In this document: in pieces, positions 7,107 through 47,214 of the stretch
Position numbering within the stretch: the stretch's first letter is position 1
Layout of the letters: every line of letters starts with the position of its first letter
Virus record (IMG/VR): IMGVR_UViG_3300028364_000014
Coordinates: 173,911 to 237,910 of that record
Reading direction: 5' to 3' (one strand)
DNA length: 64,000 bases
Translations under genes and position numbers: made by a program
Notes under the pieces: generated by a model
The model's input: only the letters and a program-made list of their open reading frames with translations
Databases searched by the model: none
What the model was told of the DNA's origin: nothing

Positions 7107-8078
7107 TTATTTAAAATTATACAGTCTTACTTTAACTTTACTATTATTTAATAAAAATTCTGAGTTATCATCATAAAAGGTTACACCGGTTACTACCACT
7201 TCTGAAATGCCGGCGTTAATTATCTTAATAATGCATCTAAAACACGGTATTCCGCAACTTAAATAAAGAGTAGCTCCTTTAGTAGCTATACCATGCCAAG
7301 CAGCATTCAAGATTGCATTTTCTTCTGCATGACCTGCTATACATATGTCCAACATCTCACCGGATTTAGCGCCCATAGAGTGTCTAGGGCATATTGGATT
7401 ACATGGATCAATAGGTTTAATTACCTTATCTTTGTACTTATTTATAAAATTAGAATCTAACTCCCATCTACGCTCACAGCTTGGTATCCCTCTAGGAGGT
7501 CCATTATATCCAGTACTTACTATACTTTTATCTTTAACTAGGACAGCCCCTATTCGTCTAGATAAACACTTAGAATGTCTTGCTGCTTGTCTACACACAT
7601 TAAAAAAATACTCATCCCAGTTTTTAACTGGAGGGTCGGTAATAGAATAAACATCTACTGGGTTATTTAATAATTTATCCTTATCTTCATCAGTAACCAA
7701 CTCAACCGGTAAATGTAGCTTCTGAGCAGTAACTTCTGCTACAAAATCCCTACGTTTTTGTATAAAAGCACTAATACCTGTTACTTTAGTCATTATTAAA
7801 TATTTCAAAGTTAATGATAGTATAAATTTATCCAAAATTTCTTTGTCATCATGTAATCTTTCAATTAAAGTATCTTTAATTTCATTATAAGCTTCAGTAA
7901 AAGAATACCCTACTTCTTTTGATACTTTTAATATATTAGCTACGTCAATTATAACAGTAGAATCAAAAGTTAATATAAAACTATCGATTTTTTTTAAAGT
8001 TCTTTCTGTTACTGGACCTTTAAAATACTTATGAAATAAGGTCTTAAAAAAATCATCTAAAATTAATTGGTTTATCAT
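7107..8078 (-). CDS. dCMP deaminase with ~145-aa N-terminal extension
   Basis: WDEYF, SKCLSRRIGAVLV, GYNGPPRG, HAEENA, PCFRC. Confidence 0.85.
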   Translation of the reverse strand: MINQLILDDFFKTLFHKYFKGPVTERTLKKIDSFILTFDSTVIIDVANILKVSKEVGYSFTEAYNEIKDTLIERLHDDKEILDKFILSLTLKYLIMTKVTGISAFIQKRRDFVAEVTAQKLHLPVELVTDEDKDKLLNNPVDVYSITDPPVKNWDEYFFNVCRQAARHSKCLSRRIGAVLVKDKSIVSTGYNGPPRGIPSCERRWELDSNFINKYKDKVIKPIDPCNPICPRHSMGAKSGEMLDICIAGHAEENAILNAAWHGIATKGATLYLSCGIPCFRCIIKIINAGISEVVVTGVTFYDDNSEFLLNNSKVKVRLYNFK

Positions 8079-13145: not shown

Positions 13146-13748
13146 TTACTTCAATCTATTACCAATCTCAATATTTCGTATAATATCTTGCCAAGTATTT
13201 ACCCTAGTAATAATATCCGGGTTAAAATTAAGCCAACTATTCCAAGGACGAGTAAGCACCATTAACCCTTTACGCCATCTAAGCTGTGCTTGTGCCATTT
13301 CTTCTAAATTAGGAAGACAATCATCGACATAACAATCAAGTTTATATTTCTTAATATGTTGTCCTTTCTCATTACCGTCAGTCATAACCAACTTAGTAAA
13401 CGGTATATTATTATGACATAACCAAGTAGCAGTAGAGTCTTTAAAATCATGCTCACGTTTAGTTATAATATAAATTTTATGACCTGATTTATTTAATATA
13501 TTTAAACACTTAACTGCATTTTTATAGGGCTTTACTGTAGCCAACATATCCTCTGAGTGAACAGCCCATGTCATAGCACTACACATAGCTTTCTGTTTTT
13601 CCTCATTCGCTGTAAATATGTTTTTTTGAAACCAAAAATGATTCAAATCTTCTACCTTAGCATTTGTACCAAGCTCATAATTACAATAATCTATAGCCAT
13701 GTGAGCTGTCTTACTTATTACTTCATCCAAATCAAAACCTAGATTCAT
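13146..13748 (-). CDS. HAD-family 5'(3')-deoxyribonucleotidase (NT5C-like)
   Basis: GFDLDEVI, IITKR, YVDD, TRPWN. Confidence 0.8.
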   Translation of the reverse strand: MNLGFDLDEVISKTAHMAIDYCNYELGTNAKVEDLNHFWFQKNIFTANEEKQKAMCSAMTWAVHSEDMLATVKPYKNAVKCLNILNKSGHKIYIITKREHDFKDSTATWLCHNNIPFTKLVMTDGNEKGQHIKKYKLDCYVDDCLPNLEEMAQAQLRWRKGLMVLTRPWNSWLNFNPDIITRVNTWQDIIRNIEIGNRLK

Positions 13749-21133: not shown

Positions 21134-22345
21134 CTAATATCTTTTATTTACTATTGCTTGATACCACGCTTTATGCCAGCTCCTATCTTTGTTCGCTTTA
21201 CTATTACAAGAACGACATATGGTTATTAAATTACTAGGTTTACAGTCTTTCTTGTCGTAATTAATGTGATGGATAGTTAAATCGTTTGGATTTTTAGAAT
21301 TACAGTACGGATTTAAACATTTATTTCCATCACGATTTCTTATATCTTTTTTATAATCTAAGTCTTTCCAGACTTCACAATAAAGCTCGAAGGATTTACC
21401 TCCTCTCCATTGTTGATTACCAGCACCAAAACTATCCAAGTGTGAACAAACCGGACACCTATGACCATCCGCCCAATCATAAAACCTAATTGTACCTTTA
21501 TGTCCTAAAGGGCATATATAGTTTAGCTTTGTTTTATTGTTTTTATATTCACCACTTAAAAGGGTATAACCCTCCAATTCAAAAAAACTTCTTACCTCTT
21601 TAATAGTTTTCTTCATTTTACCAGAACATTCTGGGCATCTATTACCTTGTTTCCAATTACCCCAAACCATACTACAGTGATGCCCTTTATCACAAACATA
21701 ATCAAGTTTAGAGTTATTGTTAATATATTCAGTGCTTAGTAATATGTAGCCTGCCTCCTTAAAAGAATTTTTTACAAGATCATAGGATGGTTTAACATTA
21801 TCACTACAATAAAAACATCTTTTACCTTGTTGCCAATCATTCCACATAATACTGTGATGATGCCCTTTTGGGCATTTAAAAATCAATTTAGTATGTGCAT
21901 TTTTATACTTTTCACTAAGTAAAATGTAACCTTCTTTTTTAAAAGAATTTTTAATAAAAGAAAGGCTATGTCTTCTGTTATTTATTGAGCACTTATTACA
22001 TCTACTACCAGACTTCCAATTTTTCCAACTTATCGAACCTACATGCCCATTAACACATCTATAATCTAACTTTGTGTGTGCATTTTTATAACACTCACTC
22101 AATAAAAAGTAGCCTTCTTTATTAAAGGCGGTTTTTATATCACGTATATCAGGCTTAATAACTCCTGAACAGTACGGACATCTATAACATGTTTGCCAAT
22201 TTGCCCAAGTAATACTGTGTTTATGTCCATTAGGGCATATATAATTTAATTTAGTGTGAGCATTTACATACTCCTCACTAAGGAGGGTATAGCCCTCCTT
22301 CTCAAAAGATTTTTTAACAAAACTATATGTTAATTTTTTTGACAT
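21134..22345 (-). CDS. Zn-ribbon-repeat HNH endonuclease (5 repeats)
   Basis: Five ~60-aa EGY.LLS..Y.N...KL...C..GH...W....RC..C repeats; C-terminal IHHI...N...C..CN. Confidence 0.85.
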   Translation of the reverse strand: MSKKLTYSFVKKSFEKEGYTLLSEEYVNAHTKLNYICPNGHKHSITWANWQTCYRCPYCSGVIKPDIRDIKTAFNKEGYFLLSECYKNAHTKLDYRCVNGHVGSISWKNWKSGSRCNKCSINNRRHSLSFIKNSFKKEGYILLSEKYKNAHTKLIFKCPKGHHHSIMWNDWQQGKRCFYCSDNVKPSYDLVKNSFKEAGYILLSTEYINNNSKLDYVCDKGHHCSMVWGNWKQGNRCPECSGKMKKTIKEVRSFFELEGYTLLSGEYKNNKTKLNYICPLGHKGTIRFYDWADGHRCPVCSHLDSFGAGNQQWRGGKSFELYCEVWKDLDYKKDIRNRDGNKCLNPYCNSKNPNDLTIHHINYDKKDCKPSNLITICRSCNSKANKDRSWHKAWYQAIVNKRY

Positions 22346-22926
22346 TACTTATCAGTAGACCCAGAACCTCCAACCCTTGTAACATCGCTATTACAATTAT
22401 CTGATTCAAGGAACTTTTTGAATATACCTTGCACTACCGCATCACCTTTATTAAATACCCTAGTTCTATCACCGAAGTTCCAAAGAAAAATACCTATATT
22501 ACCATCATTTTTTACATTACTATAGTAATCACTATCAATAATTCCTACAATATTTTTAATCCTTATCTCATTTTTATTTGCAAGAGATGACCTAGGGTAA
22601 ACCTCAAGTACTTCATCATCTAGCATATATGCTTTTACATCTGTCCAAATAAACGCACCTTCTCCAGGTAGAATTTCTACATCAGTGGGCAGAAAAAAAT
22701 CGTACCCTGCTGATTTAGCAGTACCTCTCAACGGAAGTGTAACTTCTTCACATACTGAATAAGCCTTCAGGTAATCTTTTGCTACTACTTCAAATCCTCT
22801 AGTTCTTTTTACTTCTTTCATAATTAATTTTCCTTTTACGTCCAAGTTAATTGTATTTGTACCCTGGTAATCTGTATATACTTCTATAGTCTTTTTTTCT
22901 ACTGAATTTTTAATACCTATAATCAT
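22345..22926 (-). CDS. dut: trimeric dUTPase (probable start 22821)
   Basis: SAGYDF, PRSS, GIIDSDY, VVQGIF, RVGGSGSTD. Confidence 0.92.
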   Translation of the reverse strand: MIIGIKNSVEKKTIEVYTDYQGTNTINLDVKGKLIMKEVKRTRGFEVVAKDYLKAYSVCEEVTLPLRGTAKSAGYDFFLPTDVEILPGEGAFIWTDVKAYMLDDEVLEVYPRSSLANKNEIRIKNIVGIIDSDYYSNVKNDGNIGIFLWNFGDRTRVFNKGDAVVQGIFKKFLESDNCNSDVTRVGGSGSTDK

Positions 22927-34737: not shown

Positions 34738-35317
34738 AAATTAAATCAACATTAGTATAAATAGTTTTTATAACTTCTAACTGAGCGTCTTGATTTTCAC
34801 CATTAAGTTCTATTAGTAGATGATTAGAAATTGATTTTATATAATTTAATACTTCTCTCCAATTTTTAATCCACATTATCATAGATAGAAAAAAACATAT
34901 ATCAATTTTTTCTGAAAGTACAAAATCACTTACGTTTGAAATGGGCCTATTGTCTAAGTCAAAGTTATAAAAATTAATATTATGTGTATCATTATAATCT
35001 CGTATAAGATTAGCAGTATTAATACAATTAAAATCTCGATCAATTCCTACACCGTAGCGTATAACTGGTGCCAGCTCATGTAACATTCCTCCAACATTGC
35101 AGCCTATATCTAACACGGTTTTATCTTTAAAATCAAATTTTACATCTACTAATCTCATTTGATTATCTCTTTGTCCCTTATACACTTCTCCCTTCAATTT
35201 CAAAGTATGGTAGCCAGCATCATATTTGGTACCACCATAAGGTTGTTTTGGGTTTTTAGCATGCATAGCCATCCTTAATACTTTTTCTTTTGTCATATCT
35301 CCTATTCTATAAGTCAT
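34673..35317 (-). CDS. class I SAM-dependent methyltransferase
   Basis: VLDIGCNVGG, GIDRD. Confidence 0.8.
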   Translation of the reverse strand: MTYRIGDMTKEKVLRMAMHAKNPKQPYGGTKYDAGYHTLKLKGEVYKGQRDNQMRLVDVKFDFKDKTVLDIGCNVGGMLHELAPVIRYGVGIDRDFNCINTANLIRDYNDTHNINFYNFDLDNRPISNVSDFVLSEKIDICFFLSMIMWIKNWREVLNYIKSISNHLLIELNGENQDAQLEVIKTIYTNVDLIYAKSLDDPGQHDRRLYICNAI

Positions 35318-36150
35318 TATATATACCCCTCCTGTTTTAATAGAGTAGTCATGCTACAATTTCTTTTAAATCCATTAGTATTAACATATTGCTTACTCTC
35401 TTTTCTTCCATTATACCAATGAACACACATAACATTATTATTTATACAACTTAAATCTACACCCCTGTAAAGCTTCTGTATCGTAACATTTGGTGGATGA
35501 ATGTTATATGGGTAATAAGTCTCAAACCTAGTACCTATAACATTACCAAACTTATATAAAGAATCTAACGTAGGGTAATGAGTATTAAGCAGACTAGCCC
35601 CAAAAACTTCATGAGTATGCGGAGGTTTAACATTTTTAACAGCTTTAATCACAGACTGCAAATATACCGTATTCTTGGCGTGTATCATGATTCCTATACT
35701 ATGCCCTCCACCTGTACCGTATATGAACGAAACAATATCAGTAACCTCTTCTATCGGGACATTACCATGGTATTCTATGTTACGAAAATGTTCCATAGGC
35801 TTTAACCAAAGAACATCAAAGTCAGACCACACACCCCCTATGGTATAAAGTATGTAATACCTAAATATATCAGACCTTAGTATACCATGAAGTGCTGATG
35901 ATATACCATAATCATCTAAATCTATAGTTACTATATTCACATAGCCTAGTTTTTTTACTTCCTGAAAATAATCTTGGCCTGTATAATCGGGAATGTACCT
36001 AGCTTTCCCTTTGTAACCTTGTTTCGCAATGTAAACATTTATTTTCCATTCAGGATTATATTTATGAAATGAAACTACAGTAAGCATCTGTAGTTTTGAC
36101 ATTGGACTTCCGTCCCAATATAAGTGTAATTCGTGAGGTATAAGATCCAT
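35317..36150 (-). CDS. DXD glycosyltransferase (GT32/Gb3-synthase/Och1-like)
   Basis: LHLYW, SDIFRY..LY..GGVWSDFD, HWYNG. Confidence 0.82.
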   Translation of the reverse strand: MDLIPHELHLYWDGSPMSKLQMLTVVSFHKYNPEWKINVYIAKQGYKGKARYIPDYTGQDYFQEVKKLGYVNIVTIDLDDYGISSALHGILRSDIFRYYILYTIGGVWSDFDVLWLKPMEHFRNIEYHGNVPIEEVTDIVSFIYGTGGGHSIGIMIHAKNTVYLQSVIKAVKNVKPPHTHEVFGASLLNTHYPTLDSLYKFGNVIGTRFETYYPYNIHPPNVTIQKLYRGVDLSCINNNVMCVHWYNGRKESKQYVNTNGFKRNCSMTTLLKQEGYI

Positions 36151-36734: not shown

Positions 36735-37802
36735 TTATTTCCCTAAAAGTATGTTTATTACTGTGTCTGATACATCGTCTTTTGTATAGTCCTCGGGAGG
36801 AACCCAAAAATATGTCCTATCTTTAATAACATTAAACACATTTACTATTTGAGCAGTATCTGTGCCTACTAAAATATTAGAGCCGCACTCTATTGTTTCT
36901 TGTCTTTCTGTACTCTCTCTAATAGTAATAGAGGGTACATTAAAAAGGCAAGCTTCTTCTTGGCAGGTGCCAGAGTCAGAAATAATAACTTTTGCACTTT
37001 GTTCTAGTTTTATAAAATCAAAGAAGCCAAAAGGCTCGGACATTAATACACCATCAGCCACAGTAATCTTAAATTTATCAATTTTATCTTTAGTTCTAGG
37101 ATGCACAGAAAAAATTACTTTCATCTGCTTACTGATAATATTCAAAGCACTCACTATACCTAGTAACGACTCTTTATTGTCTACGTTCTCAGTTCTGTGT
37201 GCGGTCACAAGCACAAAATCCCTATACCCAAGACCTAGTTTATTAAGTATATCACTATTATCTATCTCATTAATATAACTCTGAATAACTTCATTAATAG
37301 GATTACCTATTTTAAACACAAAATTCTTATGGAAACCTTCAGCCAATAAGTTTTGTTTACTATTATCTGTGTATGGTAAATTGTACTTCGACACATGATC
37401 TATAATACGCCTATTAGTTTCTTCTGGAAGACGTTCATCATAGCATCTATTCCCCGCTTCCATATGATAGACAGGTATATTATATTTTTCTGCTATTATA
37501 GATAGTAAGCCAGAATTAGTGTCGCCTAACAATAATACCTTATCTGGTTTCTCTTTTAATAAAACTCGTTCAAATTGAATGATGGCACTGGATAAGAAGG
37601 TTCCAATAGAGTGCCCTTCGTTAGTAAAATAATAATCAGGCTTACGTATTTTTAGCTCATCAAAAAATTTACCACTCAAATTATAATCATAGTTCTGATT
37701 TGTGTAAATAAATATATGATCTACTACCCCATCCAACTTATTTATTAACACACTAAGGCGGATTAATTCTGGTCTTGTCCCCGCTACTGTTAAAATTTTC
37801 AT
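36735..37802 (-). CDS. non-hydrolysing UDP-HexNAc 2-epimerase (FnlC/CapG/WbjD-like)
   Basis: GTRPELIRLS, QNYDYNL, LGDTNS, HMEAGNRC, HRTENVD, SDSGT.QEE. Confidence 0.92.
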   Translation of the reverse strand: MKILTVAGTRPELIRLSVLINKLDGVVDHIFIYTNQNYDYNLSGKFFDELKIRKPDYYFTNEGHSIGTFLSSAIIQFERVLLKEKPDKVLLLGDTNSGLLSIIAEKYNIPVYHMEAGNRCYDERLPEETNRRIIDHVSKYNLPYTDNSKQNLLAEGFHKNFVFKIGNPINEVIQSYINEIDNSDILNKLGLGYRDFVLVTAHRTENVDNKESLLGIVSALNIISKQMKVIFSVHPRTKDKIDKFKITVADGVLMSEPFGFFDFIKLEQSAKVIISDSGTCQEEACLFNVPSITIRESTERQETIECGSNILVGTDTAQIVNVFNVIKDRTYFWVPPEDYTKDDVSDTVINILLGK

Positions 37803-38019: not shown

Positions 38020-38759
38020 TCCGCTGTCTCCCTTGACATACCTACCAAATTAAAATCTGTTATACGTTCAGTAGTATTCCATTTTAACGGAGTATAATGT
38101 GTGTCATGATGTAACACAGTACAACAAGTACCACCTAACCTACCATTATGCTGTGTTCTATTTATAAGGGGACGTAAAGCTTTATAACCATACTCTTTAA
38201 AAAACGCTTGTACTGACCAATCCCAACCCCAAGCTTTATAATATTTTTTAACTAGTGTAGTATCATTCCATGCTTTCTGAAAACAGCCCTCCCAACCTTC
38301 CTTAAATGTACACCAACCGAGCCCTTCAAAAAAAGGTACCTCTTCTAAAGCAGAGTAATCCTCACCTCTAGGGTTAAACCCAAACAGCCCATAGGACATA
38401 AATGTAGTAGGCTTATCTCTAAAATTATTATAATACCAATTAGCTAAATCAATAGCATCAGGAGCTAATAAAAAATCATCCTCTAAATGAACATTAAATG
38501 TAGACCCTGCTGCAAAGGCAGAACTCAGCACATTAAACATATTATCAATAGCACCTTGATGATCGTTTCTACCAATGGAGTTTTTTTTATACAAAATATT
38601 TAAAGCTAATTTAGACTCTTTTAATATTTTAATACATTCCGGAGAATTTTCGGCGCTACAAAAAATTGTATAATCATCCAGCTTTTGTTTTTCTAAACAT
38701 ATTAAAAACTCTTTCAAGTAATTTGGTCTATATCCAACAGGAAAAGTTATAGTTTTCAT
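38007..38759 (-). CDS. GT-A fold glycosyltransferase
   Basis: YRPNYL, HLEDD, GWDW, RTQHNG. Confidence 0.7.
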   Translation of the reverse strand: MKTITFPVGYRPNYLKEFLICLEKQKLDDYTIFCSAENSPECIKILKESKLALNILYKKNSIGRNDHQGAIDNMFNVLSSAFAAGSTFNVHLEDDFLLAPDAIDLANWYYNNFRDKPTTFMSYGLFGFNPRGEDYSALEEVPFFEGLGWCTFKEGWEGCFQKAWNDTTLVKKYYKAWGWDWSVQAFFKEYGYKALRPLINRTQHNGRLGGTCCTVLHHDTHYTPLKWNTTERITDFNLVGMSRETADWIK

Positions 38760-39394
38760 ATTTTTATCCTTATTTTTTTATATTTATCAATTATATCCGT
38801 AGCGTAAATACACTTTTTCAGCCCCACTAAATTAGCCTTTATAGGATCAGTTAATAAGGGTTGAACTGCCAGCCAAGGCATCAGTCCGAGAATAAATACC
38901 TCATTACATAATAAATCATGTACATAAATAAACGCTGTTAGTGCCTCTAGCTCCTTATTTTTAAACAATGAGTCTTCTCCATACTTATTATGGAGATTGG
39001 ATTTTTGATAAGTCCAAGAAGGGTTGTCATTACCTGTATAAATTAAAGTAGATTTACTGCATGTTTTTATATGTATGCCAGGAAAAGTACTTTTTGGGTA
39101 TGGTAAGTCACAAGACCAACTTTTCTTACCAACAGGAAGCACTGTTAAATCAGGAGCCGCACTTGGATAGCCGAGCTTTTTTTCCAAATATTCGGCCACA
39201 ATAAACTCTCCAACTTTACCAATTACAATATCGTGGTGTGCTTTTAACGCTCTTCTTTCATTTTTATAATAAGTTTTACTTTGTAAACTCGCACTGGCAA
39301 ACCTACGTGATTTTTCTACATAGTCATTAAATTTTAATTTATCTACCGTATATGGGTCTAAAAATAATACAGTGTTATCGCTATAACAATACAT
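38756..39394 (-). CDS. PD-(D/E)xK-like hypothetical nuclease
   Basis: GKVGEFIV..YL...PD...HIKT. Confidence 0.45.
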   Translation of the reverse strand: MYCYSDNTVLFLDPYTVDKLKFNDYVEKSRRFASASLQSKTYYKNERRALKAHHDIVIGKVGEFIVAEYLEKKLGYPSAAPDLTVLPVGKKSWSCDLPYPKSTFPGIHIKTCSKSTLIYTGNDNPSWTYQKSNLHNKYGEDSLFKNKELEALTAFIYVHDLLCNEVFILGLMPWLAVQPLLTDPIKANLVGLKKCIYATDIIDKYKKIRIKI

Positions 39395-39401
39395 AATTCC
39401 C

Positions 39402-40241
39402 TTAAAAATTACTTATAAGTAGTTCTGTTTTAAAATTACGGGCTGTGTTTATAGAGTAATTTATATTATTAATAATTTCTATATTTGCCCAACCCATATA
39501 CAACGAACTTATTTCTTCACAATTATCGTAAGACAAGGTCCAAAAATGCTTAGTGTTTTTTAAAGAGTCAGCCAATCTTATATGATCTTGATAATTAAAC
39601 CCACACTGATATAACTCTTGCCCCTTAACAAAATAAGGTGGGTCTAAGTACAACAAAGCAGTAACTTCGTCATCAGTAATCAACTCAGAAAAATCCAAAG
39701 ACGAACATTTTATATGTTTGTTTTTAAATAATGAATTTAATTTATTAATATTTTTAGATAAATGCCCTGGGGACCATCTACAATCTATTTTATATTTAGA
39801 TTTCTGTTCTTTTCCGCCTAAAGGACCTCCGGATTTAGTTCCTAGTCCTGAAAAAGAAAGTTGATGAATAGTTAATTTCTTAAACCCATACAGTAACCTT
39901 TCTTCGTTGGTCAAGTCATTAAATTTTATATCTTCCAATAGTTGTTTCTTAGCAGTATAAAAATAATCCACAGAAGGGGTAAACTTCTGTATCAATTCTA
40001 TTAACCCGATAGGGTTATTTATAACAGTAAACCACAAACAAGCTATCCCAAAATCAAAATCATTTATCCAAAAACTATTTATACCTGATATAGTGAGTAA
40101 CTCAGTGGTAATTTTTCCACCACCTAAAAAAGGTTCCCTGTATTCAATTATTGTATCATCCTTGCTCAATCCTTCACATAACTTACTAAGTATCTGGTCC
40201 CTTAGTTTAGCTTTACCTCCTGGGTATCTAAAAAACGACAT
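39402..40241 (-). CDS. Dam-like (D12 class) N6-adenine DNA methyltransferase
   Basis: RYPGGK, EPFLGGG, INDFD, YLDPPY, LSYD, ELLISN. Confidence 0.9.
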   Translation of the reverse strand: MSFFRYPGGKAKLRDQILSKLCEGLSKDDTIIEYREPFLGGGKITTELLTISGINSFWINDFDFGIACLWFTVINNPIGLIELIQKFTPSVDYFYTAKKQLLEDIKFNDLTNEERLLYGFKKLTIHQLSFSGLGTKSGGPLGGKEQKSKYKIDCRWSPGHLSKNINKLNSLFKNKHIKCSSLDFSELITDDEVTALLYLDPPYFVKGQELYQCGFNYQDHIRLADSLKNTKHFWTLSYDNCEEISSLYMGWANIEIINNINYSINTARNFKTELLISNF

Positions 40242-40245
40242 AAAA

Positions 40246-41364
40246 TTAAATATCCTTTATTTCAGTAATAATTTTATCTGCTATAACTTCCCAAGAAAAA
40301 TTCTCTTTAATATAATTCTTTAGGGTCATTCCTTTCTCTTTTGCTTTATTTTGATTTTCATATACATACTTCATTTTGTTAGCCCCGTCTAATACATCAG
40401 GCTCAGCCCATAACTGTGTTCCATCATACCACGGACTCCAAGGCATGCTATGTACGGGCGTCAACATATGGTTTACTAGATAACTATTGTCTTCTTTTGC
40501 ATACTCTGTTGCGCCGCCAAATCCGGTAACTACGATTGGATTACCAGCAGCTCCAGCAGTAAAACTGGAGAGTCCAAAACCTTCACCCCTATCTAAAGAC
40601 ACATAACAATCACCCCTAGTATGTAAAGAGGTTATTTCATCCTCAGACAGCATATTACCAATAAGAACCATCTTAGGAAAATCAGACATAGGCATATTAT
40701 ACTTTAGAGATTTGATCATTCTAATCACACCTTCTTTTTGCTGATCCGAGTAGTCATTACCGTATGTTTTTAAAACCAGTACTACATCTTTATTACCATT
40801 AAATGCGTGGTAATAAGCCCTTATGAGTGCTTGAGGGCACTTTCGTTCAGTCCACTGACAGATATTATAAAAAACAAAATCAGTGTCTTTTACACCAGCA
40901 ATTTTAAAAGAATCAAAAGAATCAAAAGCTTTAGTACTAATTCCGTGAGGAACTACCCCTATCGGAATAGTCACACCACTATCTTTAAATATCTCCCTAT
41001 TCCACTCACAGCCTACTAATACTTTATCAACAGAATTATTTATAAAAGGCGTCCAATCAGAATGTAACTTAGTAGTCTCCCAAATTGTAAACCCACAATT
41101 TATTTTACCCACTTGTCTATACTTAGACCAAAATTCTGGAGTAGTGTGTATAAAATTAATATTATATAGAATTGAATTTTCAACTAAACTTTTTAATAGT
41201 TTACCATCTTCTCCTAAGTCTGGCTTGCTGTTTTCAAAAGAAATAGGATTGATAGTAATAGGCACACCGGCTTGGTGTAACGCTAGTATATTACCCCTAC
41301 ACGCTTTACCATAACCGCTTGAATCAAAAACCGGTCCTGTATATCTAATTCCTGTTATATCCAT
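40246..41364 (-). CDS. GT4 (GT-B) glycosyltransferase
   Basis: SGYGKA, PHG, RGEGFGL...A..G.P. Confidence 0.85.
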   Translation of the reverse strand: MDITGIRYTGPVFDSSGYGKACRGNILALHQAGVPITINPISFENSKPDLGEDGKLLKSLVENSILYNINFIHTTPEFWSKYRQVGKINCGFTIWETTKLHSDWTPFINNSVDKVLVGCEWNREIFKDSGVTIPIGVVPHGISTKAFDSFDSFKIAGVKDTDFVFYNICQWTERKCPQALIRAYYHAFNGNKDVVLVLKTYGNDYSDQQKEGVIRMIKSLKYNMPMSDFPKMVLIGNMLSEDEITSLHTRGDCYVSLDRGEGFGLSSFTAGAAGNPIVVTGFGGATEYAKEDNSYLVNHMLTPVHSMPWSPWYDGTQLWAEPDVLDGANKMKYVYENQNKAKEKGMTLKNYIKENFSWEVIADKIITEIKDI

Positions 41365-41985
41365 TTATACCTTCTCCTTCGTTATAAAATATGGATGGTC
41401 TACTTGAGCTAGTACTTGCTTACAAAATGAAGGCCATTCAGGCTCTTTATGTTTATATCGTTGGTGTACCATATGCTGTAAATTCATATAATTTAAATGA
41501 ATAGTTCTTATGTACATATAACCAGATGGTAGATTACGTTTTAATTTAATTAAGTCAGCTCCTTCTTCAAGCAGTTCTTTATACCTATTTAAAATCACCT
41601 CATCTACTAAATGATCTATACCATTAGCTAGTTCTGATTTCTTTAACATATGCATAGTAGATGTTGATTGGACCGCTGCTATAGTAGTGTAAGTAGCTTG
41701 TTGCTGCCACCAATCGCAGGGGGCTTGGACAATAAGGTCTACATTCATAGCTCTAAGAAATTTATTATGTCCCATACCTTTAAAGGCCATTTTTTTAGCC
41801 CGCTCTAACATTTGATAATACAACTCATTATAATTACCAACACCGTCTAAAAAAATAGAGACGCCTTCATCCAAACCCTTTACTGTCTTATCAAAAGCTA
41901 ACCCCATTCCTACCAGAGCAGACAAGAAATTACCTGATGATTCATGTAATTTTTTAACTTTAATCATATTGTCCTCCATAACCAT
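41365..41985 (-). CDS. divergent ThyX-fold protein (probable start 41967)
   Basis: GH.KFLR...AP..WW.Q..TY...STSTMH, RNLP, NY...R..H...EW; lacks the RHRX7S motif. Confidence 0.5.
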   Translation of the reverse strand: MVMEDNMIKVKKLHESSGNFLSALVGMGLAFDKTVKGLDEGVSIFLDGVGNYNELYYQMLERAKKMAFKGMGHNKFLRAMNVDLIVQAPCDWWQQQATYTTIAAVQSTSTMHMLKKSELANGIDHLVDEVILNRYKELLEEGADLIKLKRNLPSGYMYIRTIHLNYMNLQHMVHQRYKHKEPEWPSFCKQVLAQVDHPYFITKEKV

Positions 41986-42020
41986 CAGTTACACCGGACG
42001 GAACCTATGCAACTGATGGT
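41981..42020 (-). promoter_or_regulatory. leader hairpin between a promoter and the RBS of the ThyX-fold gene
   Basis: Perfect 10-bp inverted repeat ACCATCAGTT/AACTGATGGT with a partly pairable 20-nt interior. Confidence 0.6.
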
Positions 42021-42036
42021 GTTATTATTACTATAT

Positions 42037-42064
42037 AATATAATACATTTTTCTAGTTTGTCAA
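42037..42064 (-). promoter_or_regulatory. promoter TTGACA-N16-TATATT
   Basis: aatata 42037-42042, tgtcaa 42059-42064. Confidence 0.8.
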
Positions 42065-42065
42065 T

Positions 42066-43358
42066 CTAAAAAGTTTCAGCTGTTATAACCTTTCTGTCTA
42101 TACCAATTTCATTGACCGCAGTAGGATTTTTAAGGTCTCTTACAGCCTTATCAAAAATACTAACCCAAGCTTTGGCTATCTTACCCTGCCAATTCAATTC
42201 CGACTTCACCCACCCATAGGCTGTCTCCGCTTTCGCCTCAGCTTCTACGTAATTGTTGTAAATATACACCATCTTCTTCGCCATATCTTCGACATCAACA
42301 AGCGGCCTAATAACTTCATTGTCATTTGGTAGAACAGTATGTAATCCAGGAGTAGTCCCACTATCAATTAGGTAGCCCTTATCTTCAGTAATGTATTCTC
42401 CCATAGCTGTATTATTAGGCATTAAAACAGGGGTCTTAGTAGCCATAGCCTCTACCCAAGAAAGACCAAAACCCTCCCCTAAAGTCGTACTAACAACAAG
42501 ATCAGAGACATTGTATATTAAATTAACAATTTCTTTAGGATACCCTTGATTAGGCCCAAAATTCTCTGGAAAAACAACATCTTCTCCAACAACTAGACCA
42601 TAGGACTTACAAACCTCATCCAGACTCCAACCCTGGTCTTTCATTGCCATATGTAGATATAAAATAGAAGTTGGCACTTCCTTTCTAAACTCCACAAATG
42701 CAGCTATAGTTCTAGGTATATCTTTTCTATGCTGATTTCGATTAACATTAGTAATAATAAATTTATCTGCGTGCTTACCAAAATACTGTGCCTTAAACTT
42801 TTTAATAATATCCTTAGGTAGAGGTTTAAAATCATCAATATTAGCGCCATGAGGCACTACTTGCATGTCTTGTACAGCAGGGTATACTTTCTTAGCCTCG
42901 TTAGCTCCAAACTTGGAATAAGCCACTAAGTAATCAACGGCATCCACATTTTTAATCCATTGCTCTTTAGGAACACCATCAATAGGAAAATAACAAATTG
43001 ATTTAAAGGCTTTCCCACTCGCTATTAGGGCTGGTATAAGTTTAGGTAAAAAATCTAAAATAAAAGTATCCTGCAAACAAAACAAGATGTCATACTCCAT
43101 TTGCTGGGCCATGCTTACAAATTTCTGTCTTCCGTATGGGTCCTTTTGTGTGTTAGTACCGGCTGGGAACTGGCGATAAGGGAAGGTATGCGGATCGCCC
43201 CAGTAGTTGATAGCAAATATATCGATATCATATCTTCCAGTTTTAAATAACGCTTCACAAATATTTCTAGACACAGATCCAAAACCTGTTGCACATGAGA
43301 CTGCATCAGCATATACAAGTACTTTAGTTTTCTTATTTACTTTTTTGTTTTTTGCCAT
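42066..43358 (-). CDS. GT4 (GT-B) glycosyltransferase
   Basis: TGFG, PHG, NRNQHRKD, GEGFGL..VEAMA. Confidence 0.88.
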   Translation of the reverse strand: MAKNKKVNKKTKVLVYADAVSCATGFGSVSRNICEALFKTGRYDIDIFAINYWGDPHTFPYRQFPAGTNTQKDPYGRQKFVSMAQQMEYDILFCLQDTFILDFLPKLIPALIASGKAFKSICYFPIDGVPKEQWIKNVDAVDYLVAYSKFGANEAKKVYPAVQDMQVVPHGANIDDFKPLPKDIIKKFKAQYFGKHADKFIITNVNRNQHRKDIPRTIAAFVEFRKEVPTSILYLHMAMKDQGWSLDEVCKSYGLVVGEDVVFPENFGPNQGYPKEIVNLIYNVSDLVVSTTLGEGFGLSWVEAMATKTPVLMPNNTAMGEYITEDKGYLIDSGTTPGLHTVLPNDNEVIRPLVDVEDMAKKMVYIYNNYVEAEAKAETAYGWVKSELNWQGKIAKAWVSIFDKAVRDLKNPTAVNEIGIDRKVITAETF

Positions 43359-43377
43359 AATTTATTTTATTTCCTTT

Positions 43378-44418
43378 TTAATAATTATAATTATATCGTT
43401 TATTTAATACCGCCCGATACCAAGCTTTGTGCCAGTTTCTATCTTTATTGGCCTTAGAATTACACGAACGGCATACTGTAATTAAATTTGACGGACTACA
43501 ATTCTTTTTATTATAATCAACATGATGTATTGTTAAATCATTTGGATTTTTAGAATTACAGTATGGGTTTAAACATTTATTTCCATCTCTATCACGAATG
43601 TCTTGTTTGTATTCTTGGTCTTTCCAAGCTTCACAGTAAGGTTCAAAGGATATTCCACCTTTCCAAGAGTTATTACCAGAACCAGATATCCTAATAGACC
43701 AACAAGTAGGACATCTATATCCAGTTTTCCAATCACTCCATGTAATATAATGCACATGACCAAAAGAACATCTATAACTCAACTTGGTTTTATTATTTAC
43801 ATAATTTTTACTCAGGAGGACATATCCCTCCTTTTCAAATTCATTTTTAATATAATATATATCGTGTCTAACATTTCCTGCACAATACTTGCACCTATAT
43901 CCTTGCTTAAAATTACCAAACGTCATAGAAGTTTCATGACCATTAGGGCATACACACTCCAATTTAGTATTAATATTTACATACACATTAGATTTTAATA
44001 TATAACCTTCTAATTTAAAAGCAAGTTTAACATCTTCTATAGTAGATTTCCCTTGTCCAGTACAATAAGGGCATCTATGTCCTGTTGACCAATTAAACCA
44101 AGTAGTACCGTGTTCGTGCCCATTTGGGCAAGTATAATTAAGTTTTTGTCTATTATTTATATACTCTTCACTAAGTAAAGTGTACCCCTCATCTTCAAAA
44201 GATTTTTTTATAAATTCTATATGTAATTTTATATTTCCAGCACACGAAGGGCATCTATGATTTGCTGACCAATTTTGCCATGTAATATTATGACGATGAC
44301 CCTCAGGACAAATATATTTCAGCTTTGTTTTCGAATTAACATACTCACTACTTAATAATTCATAACCCTCCTTCTCAAAACTTCCCTTAACAAATTCATA
44401 GGTTAACTTTTTTGGCAT
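43378..44418 (-). CDS. Zn-ribbon-repeat HNH endonuclease (4 repeats)
   Basis: Same family as 21134-22345. Confidence 0.85.
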   Translation of the reverse strand: MPKKLTYEFVKGSFEKEGYELLSSEYVNSKTKLKYICPEGHRHNITWQNWSANHRCPSCAGNIKLHIEFIKKSFEDEGYTLLSEEYINNRQKLNYTCPNGHEHGTTWFNWSTGHRCPYCTGQGKSTIEDVKLAFKLEGYILKSNVYVNINTKLECVCPNGHETSMTFGNFKQGYRCKYCAGNVRHDIYYIKNEFEKEGYVLLSKNYVNNKTKLSYRCSFGHVHYITWSDWKTGYRCPTCWSIRISGSGNNSWKGGISFEPYCEAWKDQEYKQDIRDRDGNKCLNPYCNSKNPNDLTIHHVDYNKKNCSPSNLITVCRSCNSKANKDRNWHKAWYRAVLNKRYNYNY

Positions 44419-44427
44419 ACCTTATAC

Positions 44428-45585
44428 CTACTTTTTAATTGCTTTAGTTGCCAAAAAAGGCATAGTGAAATTAGTTACAGCACCTTCTTCTATCTTTTCT
44501 CTAGCTCTAGGATTTTTTGAACAATAATTATCTACATCTTTTTTCTTAAGATTAACCATTTCCACAAACTCCTCAGCTGATGTATTCTCCTGCACCACCT
44601 TAGGGTCGTAATTAACTCTAGCGTTCTGTCTTATATAAACCTGCTTGTTCTCCCCATATAAATTAGTTCCAGCCTCCTTAATCTTTTCCATAATTACCAT
44701 TGCAATTTCTCTTTTCCTTGTATCAAGAATCCTAGCTGTACTAGAAATCTGGTCGTACTCTTCAATTAATTGATCATTTGTAAGTTTAGCTGTAGGTAAA
44801 AATTCAAACTTTTTATTACTACAAGCCTTTTGATATTTATCGCAGTAATCCCGAAAATCACACCAAGGACAAAAAATATTCAAAGAAGCTACAGCATCCT
44901 TTTCTTTTATATTACACATCTCATCATACACAGTAACTAAATAATTATTAGTCTCATTACGTTGCTCATCTGTACGATAACTAAATACTGGAGAAGATCT
45001 CAACATATCTAGACAAAGTATTATCCTCTCATACTTAGGCCATAGTTTATGCGCTACTAAATCATATAAAGATAACTGCAAATCATCCTGTAATTGATCT
45101 GGAGTAGGGGCAGTTTTAGATGTTTTATAATCCACAATCATAAGTGTTTCATCATCTAGCTTAACTACTTTATCCATAGCACCAATCAAAGGCACACCCA
45201 TATCTGTCTCTAGATCTGGCCACCTACTATCTGCAAAACCAAAAGTCTCCTCTAAACTAATAATCTCTCTACCTAAAGCAAAATCCTCTACTCTATTTTT
45301 TACGAGTGCTTTACCCTCAACATGTACTTGCATCGATTCAATGCCTTCCCTAACTGACACTTTATCGTACACATCATATATTTTTTTGTAATCACTTTCA
45401 TCAAACTTCCCCTTCTCTGCCCAAATATGACCAGCAAATTCTAAAGCCTCATGACAAGTAGTACCCAACTTAAACGCTGGATTAGACAACTTTGGCATAT
45501 GCTCAACATACTGAAACCAGTACTTCCTTTTACAGCGCATATATGAACTAACTCTTGTAGCACTTAATTTAATCGGTCTTGCCAT
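44428..45585 (-). CDS. PD-(D/E)xK nuclease (RecB/Cas4-like exonuclease)
   Basis: LSAT...C.RKY, G.MD, VDYKT, QL.LY, CPWCDF...C. Confidence 0.85.
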   Translation of the reverse strand: MARPIKLSATRVSSYMRCKRKYWFQYVEHMPKLSNPAFKLGTTCHEALEFAGHIWAEKGKFDESDYKKIYDVYDKVSVREGIESMQVHVEGKALVKNRVEDFALGREIISLEETFGFADSRWPDLETDMGVPLIGAMDKVVKLDDETLMIVDYKTSKTAPTPDQLQDDLQLSLYDLVAHKLWPKYERIILCLDMLRSSPVFSYRTDEQRNETNNYLVTVYDEMCNIKEKDAVASLNIFCPWCDFRDYCDKYQKACSNKKFEFLPTAKLTNDQLIEEYDQISSTARILDTRKREIAMVIMEKIKEAGTNLYGENKQVYIRQNARVNYDPKVVQENTSAEEFVEMVNLKKKDVDNYCSKNPRAREKIEEGAVTNFTMPFLATKAIKK

Positions 45586-45996: not shown

Positions 45997-46456
45997 AATA
46001 ACAAAGTAATTGAGCTACGCTATCTGTTATATCATTCCAATCTTTAAACCTAATGTCTTGATTTCCAAAATTAATAAGGTCTTTTATTAAAACAAACAAT
46101 AAATCCTTAGACTTAGCTTTAAAAAAAGCCTTTGGTTTAGTATTACTCATTATATAAGGGGCTTTATTACAATACTCAAACACGGTTTGCTCTGCTATGC
46201 CCCCAAATTTAGCTAAAAGTTTTGTAACTTTAGGGTTTAATCCCACAAATGTATCTTCAAGTACTATATCAGTAGGTTTATATTTTTTTAATACCTTTAT
46301 TAGTTCTTTACGGAAATAAGTAAGTTTCTCTGTAAGTTCTGATTTCTTATTAGGAACAATTTTACCATACTTTAGAATATTATCATCAGTAGAAATAAAA
46401 GACCATCCTGTAGAAGTAGAAGACACATCTAGGCTCATTACTCGGCGTATTTTCAT
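45923..46456 (-). CDS. RuvC-like Holliday junction resolvase
   Basis: [19 protein letters not shown]. Confidence 0.8.
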
Positions 46457-47214
46457 AGCTTCTTAAGCATCTCAAGCTCTTCCTCAGTTAGATTAGTCGT
46501 GTCTGGCCAAACAATTCTTACTTGTACCACAACATCCCCTCTTGGGCCACCAAAAATACCATTACCCCCAGCCCCAGATAGTAAAAGTTGCTTACCCTCT
46601 GGGGATCTAGCTGGAACTGTAATACTTAATTCCTTATCTCGTACATTAATACGCCCAGTACCACCACAGCTATCACAGGTATTTTTAGGAATTTGCCCTG
46701 TTCCCCTACACTTATTACACGGAACATGGGTAGACATAAACATACCATTAATTCGCTCTTGTTTTAAAAATATACCCTCTCCGTCACACTCTGAACACGT
46801 CTCAAACTCAGTAGCCCCCTTAGCGTTGCATTTAATACAAATATCTTGATAAGAAACCGTAAACGCCTCTTTGCCACCAAAAATAGAAGTATAAATACTA
46901 ATAGGAACTACAACCCTTAAAGAGGCACCTTTTTGAGGAGCATTAGCTCTTCGTTGAAATCCACCAAAAGGATTATGCATACCAAATCCTTCGAAAGGGT
47001 TAAATCCACGAGATTGTTGTTGTTGATGTTTTTCTGGATTATTTAATACCTCGTACGCTTCTGAAATCTCTTTGAACTTTTCTTCAGCTTTATTGTCATC
47101 AGGATTTTTATCTGGATGGTACTTTAAAGCTAGTTTTCTATAAGCTTTTTTAATATCATCTTTAGAAGCCTCTAGAGACACTCCTAAAATATCATAATAT
47201 TTTTTAAGATTCAC
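46453..47214 (-). CDS. dnaJ: DnaJ chaperone (J domain, Zn finger, short C-terminal domain)
   Basis: YYDILGV, HPD, CxxCxGxG repeats, G.GG...GP.GD. Confidence 0.9.

What the first reader, a model, noticed from the sequence alone, without database searches (positions are those of the whole stretch)
41365..41967. ThyX-fold protein lacking the ThyX catalytic motif, sandwiched between two GT4 genes
Seen: GH, LP, N, R and EW positions line up with ThyX, but RHR...SQRY is replaced by ATY...STMH; neighbours are GT4, GT4 and a Dam-like MTase. Known: phage DNA hypermodification often pairs a thymidylate-synthase homolog with a glycosyltransferase. The window also has dCMP deaminase, dUTPase, a 5'-nucleotidase and an atypical UDG, with no canonical thyA/thyX. 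Inference: either a divergent dTMP synthase or a pyrimidine-modifying enzyme that creates a glycosylation handle.
Basis: inference. Interest (0 to 1): 0.6.

Follow-up and report, generated by a model that had tools for sequence, protein, structure and literature searches.

The report
Phage ThyX-fold protein without ThyX motif
This lake jumbo-phage gene encodes a protein with the fold and four-subunit assembly of the flavin-dependent thymidylate synthase ThyX but without its signature motif; it belongs to a large, unnamed phage family that occupies the ThyX position in phage genomes, and the link to the neighbouring sugar transferases is probably only local gene order.

Summary
The gene at window 41365-41967 (minus strand, 200 aa) is real and under purifying selection (dN/dS about 0.1). 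A high-confidence model (pLDDT 93.6) matches only ThyX and PolB structures (Z 15.5, rmsd 2.7 A over 180 of 200 residues). It is modelled as a ThyX-like homotetramer.

It is not a canonical ThyX. Pfam Thy1 scores 14.6 bits against a cut-off of 24.8, and the RHRxxSxxxxSxR arginines are missing. It belongs to a large, almost purely viral family with no Pfam model (phrog_6721, at least 1573 clusters at 50% identity). That family keeps the GH histidine and the counterparts of S88, R147 (as Lys), N163 and R174, and adds its own TY...SxSTMH signature.

Family members sit next to 5'-3' exonuclease, dUTPase, ribonucleotide reductase and DNA polymerase genes. They almost never share a genome with ThyX or ThyA. 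In one T7-like lineage a member fills the exact slot that ThyX fills in sister genomes.

The most likely role is a ThyX-derived enzyme acting on dUMP in thymidylate metabolism, with changed cofactor handling. The GT4-X-GT4 order is confined to this jumbo-phage lineage, and the GT4 relatives lie in glycan cassettes. The DNA-glycosylation idea is therefore possible but weakly supported.

The parts
41365..41967 (-). ThyX-fold protein 'X' (200 aa, P0001), a member of the unnamed phage family phrog_6721. It has the GH motif (G66-H67), T92-Y93, S101-x-S103-T-M-H106, K143, L146-P147, R154, N159-Y160, Q169-R170, H173 and W178.
   Evidence: dN/dS is 0.09-0.11 against orthologs.
41968..42065 (-). Intergenic leader of X. 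It holds a sigma-70-like TTGACA-16-TATATT (42064-42037), a perfect 10-bp inverted repeat ACCATCAGTT/AACTGATGGT (42020-41981) and a GGAGG ribosome-binding site 6 nt before the ATG.
   Evidence: These are consensus and sequence matches only; function was not tested.
42066..43358 (-). GT4 glycosyltransferase 1 (430 aa), upstream neighbour.
   Evidence: Pfam Glycos_transf_1 at 9e-11 and GT4-conflict at 2e-8. phrog_2170 at 4.5e-51. Relatives occur in phages TJE1, S-CBS4 and S-EIVl, inside sugar cassettes in the two regions examined.
40246..41364 (-). GT4 glycosyltransferase 2 (372 aa), a paralog of GT4 1. Its start codon abuts the stop codon of X.
   Evidence: The same tight junction is seen in L008.
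39402..40241 (-). D12-class N6-adenine DNA methyltransferase (Dam-like).
   Evidence: Pfam MethyltransfD12 at 2.7e-22. PADLOC PD-Lambda-5_B at 4.7e-55.
44428..45585 (-). PD-(D/E)xK exonuclease, the end of the replication/recombination block that precedes GT4-X-GT4 in all relatives.
   Evidence: phrog_69 at 2.4e-29. PF12705 in L006 and L008. 52-62% identity in L062 and L048.
7107..8078 (-). dCMP deaminase, a source of dUMP.
   Evidence: Pfam dCMP_cyt_deam_1 at 2e-17.
22345..22926 (-). dUTPase, a source of dUMP that also keeps dUTP low.
   Evidence: PF00692 at 51.5 bits at G000 196315-196656, which is window 22405-22746.
13146..13748 (-). NT5C-type 5'(3')-deoxyribonucleotidase.
   Evidence: Pfam NT5C at 3.2e-9.

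Best explanation
Shown. The gene encodes a member of a large, phage-specific sister family of ThyX. The family has no Pfam model, PHROG 6721 lists it as 'unknown function', and I call it X. X has the ThyX fold. It is modelled as a ThyX-like homotetramer whose conserved residues lie at subunit interfaces, where ThyX builds its active sites. X keeps the counterparts of the histidine that stacks on folate (GH) and of four dUMP-site or pocket residues: S88, R147 (as Lys), N163 and the uracil-polarising R174 (invariant R170). It has lost the arginines that ThyX uses to hold FAD phosphate and dUMP (R78, R90, R165; in this subclade also R70 and R80). It has gained its own near-invariant signature: WW, TY, SxSTMH, QR..HK, W.

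Inferred. X binds a uracil nucleotide, most likely dUMP fed by the phage's dCMP deaminase and dUTPase. It acts at or near C5 in thymidylate-type metabolism and stands in for ThyX, but handles its cofactor differently and may not use a canonically bound FAD. Whether the product is dTMP or another C5-substituted dUMP is open.

The two flanking GT4 genes are most likely part of a separate glycan cassette that abuts the replication block in this jumbo-phage lineage.
For: Fold: Z 15.5, rmsd 2.7 A over 180 of 200 residues, TM 0.73, ThyX or PolB hits only.

Remote sequence homology: hhalign of X against ThyX gives E 1e-3 over 118 columns, and some members reach the Thy1 cut-off at 26-27.5 bits.

Tetramer: ipSAE 0.88 against a best control of 0.00; at least 97% of contacts shared between runs; partner pLDDT at least 85. 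The mark was reached by 20 of 30 proteins solved as pairs and 1 of 23 solved as single chains, and the calibration used two copies rather than four. Interfaces include residues 64-67, 92, 94-107, 143-150, 153-155, 159 and 165-169.

Family size and conservation: 1573 clusters at E<=1e-3. S101 and R170 are invariant, and Y93, S103, H106, R154, H173 and W178 are conserved in at least 93% of 132 representatives. Members are mostly viral.

Context in 80 viral loci: 5'-3' exonuclease 20, dUTPase 17, class II RNR 15, NrdD 15, PolA 13+6, MazG-like 10.

Complementary distribution:
- Canonical ThyX in 1 and a ThyA-like gene in 1 of 41 X-bearing records.
- Neither in 4 cultured phages.
- Among 49 NrdD-bearing records, X in 17, ThyX in 11, overlap 0.

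Same slot: between PolA and the exonuclease, sister genomes hold ThyX and G087 holds X.

Own genome: RNR, dUTPase, dCMP deaminase and NT5C are present, with no ThyA, ThyX or DHFR. Most jumbo phages carry TS or ThyX (PMC7824862).

Selection: dN/dS is about 0.1.
Against: - The defining ThyX motif is absent, so canonical FAD binding and catalysis are doubtful.
- The P0001 subclade additionally lacks family-consensus R84, D91, R/K94 and N165, so it may differ in function from the rest of X.
- The distribution test is not corrected for relatedness. Only about 4-6 independent lineages lie on each side, and many records are incomplete.
- About 40% of the NrdD phages have neither gene, so the slot is a variable accessory site.
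- One complete 92-kb genome (G040) carries both X and a canonical ThyX, which argues against simple redundancy.
- No biochemical data exist for any member. Residue roles come from my knowledge of T. maritima ThyX, not from a structure of X.
Confidence: 0.5

Rival explanations
1. Handle-maker for glycosylated DNA. X converts dUMP to a C5-hydroxymethyl or similar derivative that replaces T. The two flanking GT4 enzymes then glycosylate it in DNA, giving a base-J-like hypermodification. NT5C and dUTPase keep dTTP and dUTP out of the pool.
For: - PDDEXK-GT4-X-GT4 order is kept in five related jumbo-phage contigs, even where X is only 31-35% identical while its flanks are 52-68% identical.
- The stop codon of X abuts the GT4 2 start, and a promoter-like site precedes X.
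- DNA-modification genes sit in the same cluster: Dam here, Mom-like in L006.
- The genome has dCMP deaminase, dUTPase and NT5C but no thymidylate synthase.
- Loss of the flavin-binding arginines would fit a transfer that needs no reduction step. This last point is inference.
Against: - A GT4 lies near X in only 2 of 80 family loci, both from this lineage.
- Subclade member P0023 has no glycosyltransferase nearby.
- GT4 relatives in the two cultured phages examined sit in sugar-epimerase, methyltransferase and glycosyltransferase cassettes, one between portal and head genes.
- The cluster here and in L006 has an epimerase, an oxidoreductase, an acetyltransferase and three or more further glycosyltransferases, which is typical of glycan synthesis.
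- The colinearity extends over the whole replication block, so it can be plain shared ancestry.
- Small temperate phages that carry only X could not replace T.
Confidence: 0.1
2. Non-catalytic ThyX-derived protein (pseudoenzyme). X is a tetramer that binds dUMP or dTMP as a sensor or buffer, or that interferes with a host enzyme. It does not make a nucleotide.
For: Loss of R78, H79, R90, R165 and the QWEIR glutamate and arginine, which are invariant in 42 canonical ThyX. X co-exists with a canonical ThyX in G040. It occurs in small temperate phages with no other nucleotide-metabolism genes, for example XP41-N3.
Against: X has a new near-invariant polar signature (S101, S103, H106, H173, Y93) at the predicted inter-subunit pocket, which looks like a remodelled active site rather than decay. 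Purifying selection is strong. The distribution is complementary to ThyX.
Confidence: 0.22
3. Ordinary, merely fast-evolving flavin-dependent thymidylate synthase that still binds FAD and makes dTMP by the ThyX mechanism.
For: Same fold, tetramer, slot and phyletic complementarity as above. No DHFR in 41 X-bearing records or in this genome, as expected for ThyX-type chemistry. An Atlas cluster of relatives is auto-named 'FAD-dependent thymidylate synthase family'.
Against: Pfam Thy1 scores 14.6 bits against 24.8, and TIGR02170 gives no hit for P0001. The X and ThyX groups are separated by a very long, fully supported branch. The residues ThyX uses for FAD phosphate and dUMP phosphate are replaced across 132 representatives, and most completely in this subclade.
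Confidence: 0.13
4. Component of the glycan cassette. In this subclade the uracil-binding pocket has been re-used to bind UDP-sugar or UMP.
For: Tight operon-like packing with GT4 2. The subclade shows accelerated divergence from the family consensus.
Against: P0023 of the same subclade lies away from any sugar gene and close to dCMP deaminase and NUDIX genes. There is no precedent, and nothing else points this way.
Confidence: 0.05

Closest known systems
ThyX / Thy1, flavin-dependent thymidylate synthase (Pfam PF02511, TIGR02170; e.g. T. maritima 1O26, H. pylori 3N3Y)
   Same: Same fold (Z 15.5), similar length and a predicted homotetramer with composite interfaces. Shared positions are the GH histidine, LP, N158/163, R169/174 and W176. 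The genomic niche is the same (next to PolA, exonuclease, RNR, dUTPase), and so is the lack of a DHFR partner.
   Different: The RHRxxSxxxxSxR motif is absent. R78, R90 and R165 (with H79 replaced by Tyr) and the E and R of QWEIR are replaced. Scores fall below the family cut-offs. X has its own signature, WW...TY...SxSTMH...QR..HK. It forms a separate clade on a very long branch and is almost exclusively viral.
PolB, the ThyX-type UMP/dUMP C5-methylase of polyoxin biosynthesis (PDB 4P5A/4P5B)
   Same: It is a precedent for a ThyX-fold enzyme recruited to a different nucleotide-modification pathway. It is a structural match at Z 12.6-13.2.
   Different: From my knowledge, PolB keeps the ThyX motif and FAD-dependent chemistry. 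X does not keep the motif.
ThyA-type dUMP/dCMP hydroxymethylases of hypermodifying phages (SPO1, T4; pathway reviewed in PMC8989533)
   Same: In those phages, too, a canonical thymidylate synthase is lacking.
   Different: The fold is unrelated (ThyA). No ThyA homolog is present in this genome. No ThyX-fold hydroxymethylase turned up in the papers I searched, and I know of none.
Phage glycan cassettes with GT4 (Tetrasphaera phage TJE1, Synechococcus phage S-CBS4; jumbo-phage polysaccharide clusters in PMC7824862)
   Same: GT4 1 is 31-41% identical to their GT4. They have similar partners (sugar epimerase, methyltransferase, second glycosyltransferase).
   Different: No X-family gene is annotated beside the GT4 in the two regions examined. 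Their cassettes lie by virion genes.

Membership tests
ThyX (flavin-dependent thymidylate synthase) | ThyX/Thy1 three-dimensional fold | tested here: met
   AF2 model with pLDDT 93.6. VIA-align Z 15.5, rmsd 2.7 A over 180 of 200 residues. Foldseek TM 0.73. ThyX or PolB hits only.
ThyX (flavin-dependent thymidylate synthase) | Score above curated family cut-offs (Pfam PF02511 at 24.8 bits; TIGR02170 at 87.9 bits) | tested here: not met
   Thy1 scores 14.6 bits, C-terminal half only. NCBIfam gives no hit for P0001.
ThyX (flavin-dependent thymidylate synthase) | ThyX motif RHRxxSxxxxSxR (R78, H79, R80, S83, S88, R90, invariant in 42 canonical sequences) | tested here: not met
   hhalign pairs the motif with TYT......STST; a gapless register gives YTT.......STMH. 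Only the S88 counterpart survives.
ThyX (flavin-dependent thymidylate synthase) | dUMP-site residues R147 and R174 (T. maritima numbering) and pocket residue N163 | tested here: inconclusive
   R170 equals R174 and is invariant. K143 stands at R147. N159 equals N163. The R165 counterpart is M161. The mapping comes from a profile alignment with E 1e-3, not from a complex structure.
ThyX (flavin-dependent thymidylate synthase) | Homotetramer with active sites at subunit interfaces | tested here: met
   In silico only. ipSAE 0.88 against a best control of 0.00, with conserved residues in three interfaces. The pass may reflect likeness to solved ThyX tetramers.
ThyX (flavin-dependent thymidylate synthase) | Bound FAD and NAD(P)H/CH2-THF-dependent dTMP synthesis; thyA complementation | not testable with these tools
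   Needs protein purification, spectroscopy, an activity assay and genetics.
X family (phrog_6721; unnamed ThyX-like phage family) | Significant match to the family profile, plus the signature GH.KFL ... WW ... TY ... SxSTMH ... LP.G ... R....NY ... QR..HK..W | tested here: met
   phrog_6721 at E 1.1e-28. 417 representatives at E<=1e-10. The signature positions are present in P0001, except family-consensus R84, D91 and R/K94. The tree nests the P0001 clade inside X.
Phage DNA hypermodification module (TS-homolog handle-maker plus DNA glycosyltransferase) | A known handle-making enzyme (ThyA-type hydroxymethylase or TET/JBP dioxygenase) in the genome | tested here: not met
   No PF00303 or PF12851 match in the 237,910-bp record, which is about 87% complete.
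Phage DNA hypermodification module (TS-homolog handle-maker plus DNA glycosyltransferase) | Handle-maker and glycosyltransferase co-occur across independent lineages | tested here: not met
   GT4 lies within 10 kb of X in 2 of 80 loci, both relatives of this phage. P0023 has none.
Phage DNA hypermodification module (TS-homolog handle-maker plus DNA glycosyltransferase) | Modified base in virion DNA | not testable with these tools
   Only assembled contigs of lake and salt-lake metagenomes are available. No raw signal or chemistry is available.

The most novel reading that the evidence does not exclude
X is a flavin-independent ThyX-fold enzyme. It uses the conserved R170 to activate dUMP and transfers a one-carbon unit without the reduction step, giving 5-hydroxymethyl-dUMP or a similar product. 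In this lake jumbo-phage lineage the two flanking GT4 enzymes then glycosylate that base in DNA. The result would be a phage counterpart of base J made by an entirely new enzyme pair.
Probability: 0.08. Interest if true: 0.9.

Novelty: new variant of a known kind. Interest (0 to 1): 0.62.

Why it matters
Only two thymidylate synthase families are known, ThyA and ThyX. ThyX is defined by one motif and one flavin mechanism.

This gene belongs to a large viral family (at least 1573 clusters at 50% identity) that keeps the ThyX scaffold, the tetramer and half of the nucleotide pocket, but has rebuilt the other half. The family takes the place of ThyX in phage genomes.

- If it makes dTMP, it is a third mechanistic solution, or a flavin-binding mode that nobody has described.
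- If it makes something else from dUMP, it opens a new route to modified phage DNA.

Either result would also correct genome annotation. Members are currently labelled either 'hypothetical' or, wrongly by the criteria of the motif and family cut-offs, 'FAD-dependent thymidylate synthase'. Cultured carriers make it directly testable: Desulfovibrio phage ProddE, Fusobacterium phage Fnu1, Clostridioides phage phiCD211 and Clostridium phage XP41-N3.

Tried and rejected
- Single-sequence search of PDB sequences gave only chance hits. The 132-sequence profile reached ThyX only at E 0.18. Sequence alone would not have settled the fold.
- hhalign of the family against a single ThyX was uninformative (probability 1.9%). 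A 42-sequence ThyX profile was needed.
A 19-sequence subset worked.
- Megablast of the 10-kb region against cultured phages found nothing.
- Literature searches for a ThyX-like protein without the motif, for a ThyX pseudoenzyme, or for ThyX in hypermodification found nothing relevant.
- Domain fusions of longer family members showed only zinc ribbons, which give no functional hint.
- PADLOC gave no hit for X or the GT4s.
- The 228-aa gene beside ThyX in the T7-like slot is not an X relative.
- DHFR was sought as a sign of ThyA-like chemistry and was absent from all 41 X-bearing records and from this genome.
- Public runs hold the phage only as contigs, so base modification could not be read from them. 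They do show that the GT4-X-GT4-Dam stretch is colinear in an independent salt-lake sample.
- An anaerobe-specific reading was considered and rejected. Cultured carriers infect Clostridia, Fusobacterium and Desulfovibrio, and NrdD is a frequent neighbour. However, this phage comes from lake water and lacks NrdD.
- The careful maximum-likelihood search did not finish in time. The tree cited is the quick one, and its deep nodes inside X are unresolved.
Full report
**1. What is there**

The window is the last 64 kb of a 237,910-bp IMG/VR virus record, estimated about 87% complete. It is about 32% G+C, with nearly all genes on the minus strand. The same DNA occurs in lake and salt-lake metagenomes.

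The finding is an ORF at 41365-41985 (-). Against orthologs in two related contigs, dN/dS is 0.09-0.11. It is therefore a real gene under purifying selection.

The neighbours on the same strand are:
- a PD-(D/E)xK exonuclease (44428-45585);
- a CapR-repeat/HNH protein (43378-44418);
- GT4 1 (42066-43358), then X, then GT4 2 (40246-41364, whose start abuts the stop of X);
- a D12 Dam-like methyltransferase (39402-40241);
- a 212-aa unknown, a 250-aa weakly GT-A-like protein, UDP-GlcNAc 2-epimerase (36735-37802), and a DXD glycosyltransferase (35317-36150).

**2. Fold**

Pfam sees only a sub-threshold Thy1 match to the C-terminal half (14.6 bits, cut-off 24.8). NCBIfam sees nothing.

A first AlphaFold model from 16 sequences was mediocre (pLDDT 71) but already hit only ThyX. 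With 132 family representatives the model reached pLDDT 93.6 and pTM 0.88. Foldseek then gave TM 0.73 to H. pylori ThyX. VIA-align gave Z 15.5, rmsd 2.7 A over 180 of 200 residues, and all 47 listed entries were ThyX or the ThyX-type methylase PolB. The ThyX fold is established.

A four-copy model scored ipSAE 0.88 against 0.00 for the best of three controls. At least 97% of contacts were shared between runs and the partner pLDDT was at least 85. The mark was reached by 20 of 30 proteins solved as pairs and by 1 of 23 solved as single chains. The calibration used two copies, so those counts hold only roughly here, and the pass may partly reflect likeness to solved ThyX tetramers. Each subunit touches three others. 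The interfaces contain the conserved positions 64-67, 92, 94-107, 143-150, 153-155, 159 and 165-169, which is the arrangement ThyX uses to build its active sites.

**3. It is not a canonical ThyX**

I aligned 42 canonical ThyX sequences. Their invariant columns include G51, H52, S69, R70, Q75, R78, H79, R80, S83, S88, R90, R142, P146, N158, R160, R169 and Q175-W-E-I-R179.

Profile-profile alignment of the X family to this set is weak but full-length in its core (E 1.1e-3, 118 columns). It pairs:
- H67 with H52;
- T92-Y93-T94 with R78-H79-R80;
- S101 with S88 and S103 with R90;
- K143 with R142 (T. maritima R147);
- L146-P147 with L145-P146;
- N159 with N158, and M161 with R160 (T. maritima R165);
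- R170 with R169 (T. maritima R174), and W178 with W176.

A gapless register from GH, read by eye against the ThyX sequence, instead pairs Y93-T94-T95 with RHR and S103-T-M105-H106 with S-Q-R-Y. In either register the motif arginines are missing.

From my knowledge of T. maritima ThyX, R78, H79, R80 and R165 hold the FAD phosphates. R90 and R147 hold the dUMP phosphate. R174 polarises the uracil. H53 stacks on the folate.

X therefore keeps the uracil-activating arginine, a basic residue at the phosphate position, the serine loop and the folate histidine. It has lost most of the flavin-phosphate cradle.

**4. The family**

An exhaustive search of 1.84 billion representatives found 1573 clusters at E<=1e-3 and 417 at E<=1e-10. 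The nearest Atlas clusters are 77-100% viral. PHROGs lists the family as phrog_6721, function unknown.

In 132 representatives S101 and R170 are invariant. W87, Y93, S103, H106, P147, R154, H173 and W178 are at or above 93%. The consensus signature is GH(N)KFL...AP(R)xWW..(D)TY(R/K)......(Q)S(E)STMH(T)...K..LP(E)G(F)...R....NY..L.N...QR..HK..(E)W.

P0001 and its close relatives (50-82% identity) form a supported subclade (SH-aLRT 98, quick tree). This subclade departs from the consensus at R84C, D91A, R/K94T, T107M, F117I, E148S and Q152Y.

Canonical ThyX and X are separated by a fully supported branch of more than 5 changes per column. A few longer members just reach the Thy1 cut-off, which independently supports homology.

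**5. Genomic company of the family**

In 80 viral loci I called ORFs, clustered the neighbours, and annotated the commonest clusters. Counts of loci are:
- 5'-3' exonuclease: 20, median 0.9 kb away, in places overlapping X;
- dUTPase: 17;
- class II RNR: 15;
- anaerobic RNR NrdD: 15, with NrdG in 9;
- PolA: 13, plus 6 UDG-PolA fusions;
- clamp loader: 11;
- MazG-like and dGTP_diPhyd_N pyrophosphohydrolases: 10 each;
- DnaB: 10;
- Dam: 7.

No glycosyltransferase cluster appears among the top 40. Cultured carriers show the same pattern: ProddE (X directly before the T3-like exonuclease, then MazG, a kinase and NrdDG), XP41-N3, Fnu1 and phiCD211.

**6. Relation to thymidylate synthases**

- Among the 41 longest X-bearing records (21 at least 90% complete), one has a canonical ThyX (G040, 210 bits) and one a ThyA-like gene. 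Every other Thy1 hit at E<=1e-3 is X itself.
- Four complete cultured carriers have neither.
- As a control I collected 49 viral records through their NrdD. X is present in 17, canonical ThyX (at least 120 bits) in 11, both in none, and ThyA in none. The chance of no overlap is about 0.004 if records were independent. They are not, since there are perhaps 4-6 lineages per side, so the result is suggestive only.
- In a T7-like lineage of about 39 kb the gene order is primase/helicase-NrdG-NrdD-PolA-[slot]-5'-3' exonuclease-...-portal. The slot holds ThyX plus two small genes in G080 and G085. It holds X in G087 (hhalign probability 99.5% to the family). It holds only an 83-aa ORF in G088 and G076.
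- The window's own genome has RNR, dUTPase, dCMP deaminase and an NT5C nucleotidase, but no ThyA, ThyX, DHFR, TET/JBP or NrdD.
- A comparative study reports that most jumbo phages have TS or ThyX (PMC7824862).
- No DHFR was found in the 41 X-bearing records. That fits chemistry that does not oxidise tetrahydrofolate.

**7. The glycosyltransferase question**

The order PDDEXK-GT4 1-X-GT4 2 is found in the window and in L006, L008, L062 and L048. An independent salt-lake contig is colinear across 39400-43400.

In L062 and L048 the flanks are 52-68% identical to the window's, but X is only 31-35% identical. That X is of the consensus type and does not group with the P0001 subclade. The slot therefore keeps an X gene while the gene itself has diverged sharply or been exchanged.

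That is the best argument for a link. Against it:
- The colinearity covers the whole replication block.
- P0023, of the same subclade, lies among Macro, ADP-ribosyltransferase, dCMP deaminase and NUDIX genes with no sugar genes nearby.
- GT4 occurs near X in only those 2 of 80 loci.
- GT4 1's relatives in TJE1 and S-CBS4 sit with sugar epimerase, methyltransferase and galactosyltransferase genes, and in S-CBS4 between portal and head protease.
- The clusters here and in L006 carry an epimerase, an oxidoreductase, an acetyltransferase, methyltransferases and several GT2s. The jumbo-phage study reads such clusters as polysaccharide synthesis.

Dam here and a Mom-like gene in L006 do show that DNA-modification genes are interleaved, so the idea cannot be dismissed.

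**8. Verdict**

Shown:
- a ThyX fold and a ThyX-like tetramer model;
- absence of the ThyX motif;
- membership of a large unnamed viral family with its own signature;
- a nucleotide-metabolism and replication context;
- near-exclusion with ThyX and ThyA, and shared slot use with ThyX.

Inferred: X binds dUMP through the retained R170, K143 and Ser loop, and works in thymidylate-type metabolism in place of ThyX, with altered cofactor handling (confidence 0.5).

Rivals are a non-catalytic nucleotide-binding derivative (0.22), an ordinary FAD-dependent ThyX (0.13), a handle-maker for GT4-glycosylated DNA (0.10) and a component of the glycan pathway (0.05).

It is a new variant of a known kind. 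It is not a ThyX by that family's defining features, but it is clearly derived from ThyX.

Noticed in passing
window 41981-42064 (-): The 98-nt leader of X holds a strong sigma-70-like promoter match (TTGACA-16-TATATT, 11 of 12) followed by a perfect 10-bp inverted repeat (ACCATCAGTT ... AACTGATGGT, 20-nt loop). The repeat ends just before the ribosome-binding site. It could be an operator or a 5'-UTR hairpin.
   Followed up: partly
window 38756-40241 (-): The Dam-like methyltransferase matches the PADLOC model PD-Lambda-5_B at E 4.7e-55. The adjacent 212-aa protein (38756-39394) has no family hit and might be its nuclease partner, which would make this a phage-borne restriction-modification-like pair inside the sugar cluster.
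   Followed up: partly
window 43378-44418 (-): A 346-aa protein with four CapR-type zinc repeats and a C-terminal HNH nuclease sits between the PD-(D/E)xK exonuclease and GT4 1. In L006, L008, L062 and L048 those two genes are adjacent, so this looks like a mobile homing-endonuclease insertion.
   Followed up: partly
L006 9823-11235: In a related 189-kb contig the position of Dam is taken by a Mom-like gene (PF25680). L008 has a class I methyltransferase there. The site after GT4 2 therefore seems to be a swap point for modification genes.
   Followed up: no
L008 5660-8000 and L062 8171-10000: In two relatives, 1.8-2.3 kb of small ORFs, some on the opposite strand, are inserted between GT4 1 and X. 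Together with the non-sister X genes, this suggests a recombination-prone junction.
   Followed up: no
G069:C1:18232-18363 and G065:C1:28101-28232: Two NrdD-bearing viral records have 185-195-aa frames with weak Thy1 matches (24-35 bits when neighbouring stretches are added) that the X profile does not pick up. They may be a third divergent ThyX-like group.
   Followed up: no
L171 6862-7726 (G080) and L172 6477-7350 (G085): In the T7-like lineage the canonical ThyX is accompanied by a conserved 228-231-aa protein and a 57-68-aa protein with no family hits. The larger one is not related to X.
   Followed up: partly
window 3956-5749 (-): A 597-aa phage protein made almost entirely of PAS domains (at least three), an unusual sensory-type protein for a phage.
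   Followed up: no
window 17456-21124 (-): The ribonucleotide reductase large-subunit ORF is 1222 aa. The 523-position barrel model is spread over about 936 residues, which suggests an intein or another large insertion.
   Followed up: no
window 110-550, 10760-11536, 12037-12675, 46453-47214 (-): The phage carries YqeY-like, RlaP-type nucleotidyltransferase, RNase HII and DnaJ-like genes. The first three were identified by Pfam. The DnaJ-like call rests on reading the J-domain sequence and on PF00226 in the L008 ortholog. These are host-like auxiliary functions, recorded for annotation only.
   Followed up: no
phage records: All cultured phages carrying X infect strict anaerobes or come from gut samples (Clostridioides, Clostridium, Enterocloster, Fusobacterium, Desulfovibrio). 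NrdD and NrdG are frequent neighbours. Yet the window's phage is from lake water and lacks NrdD.
   Followed up: partly
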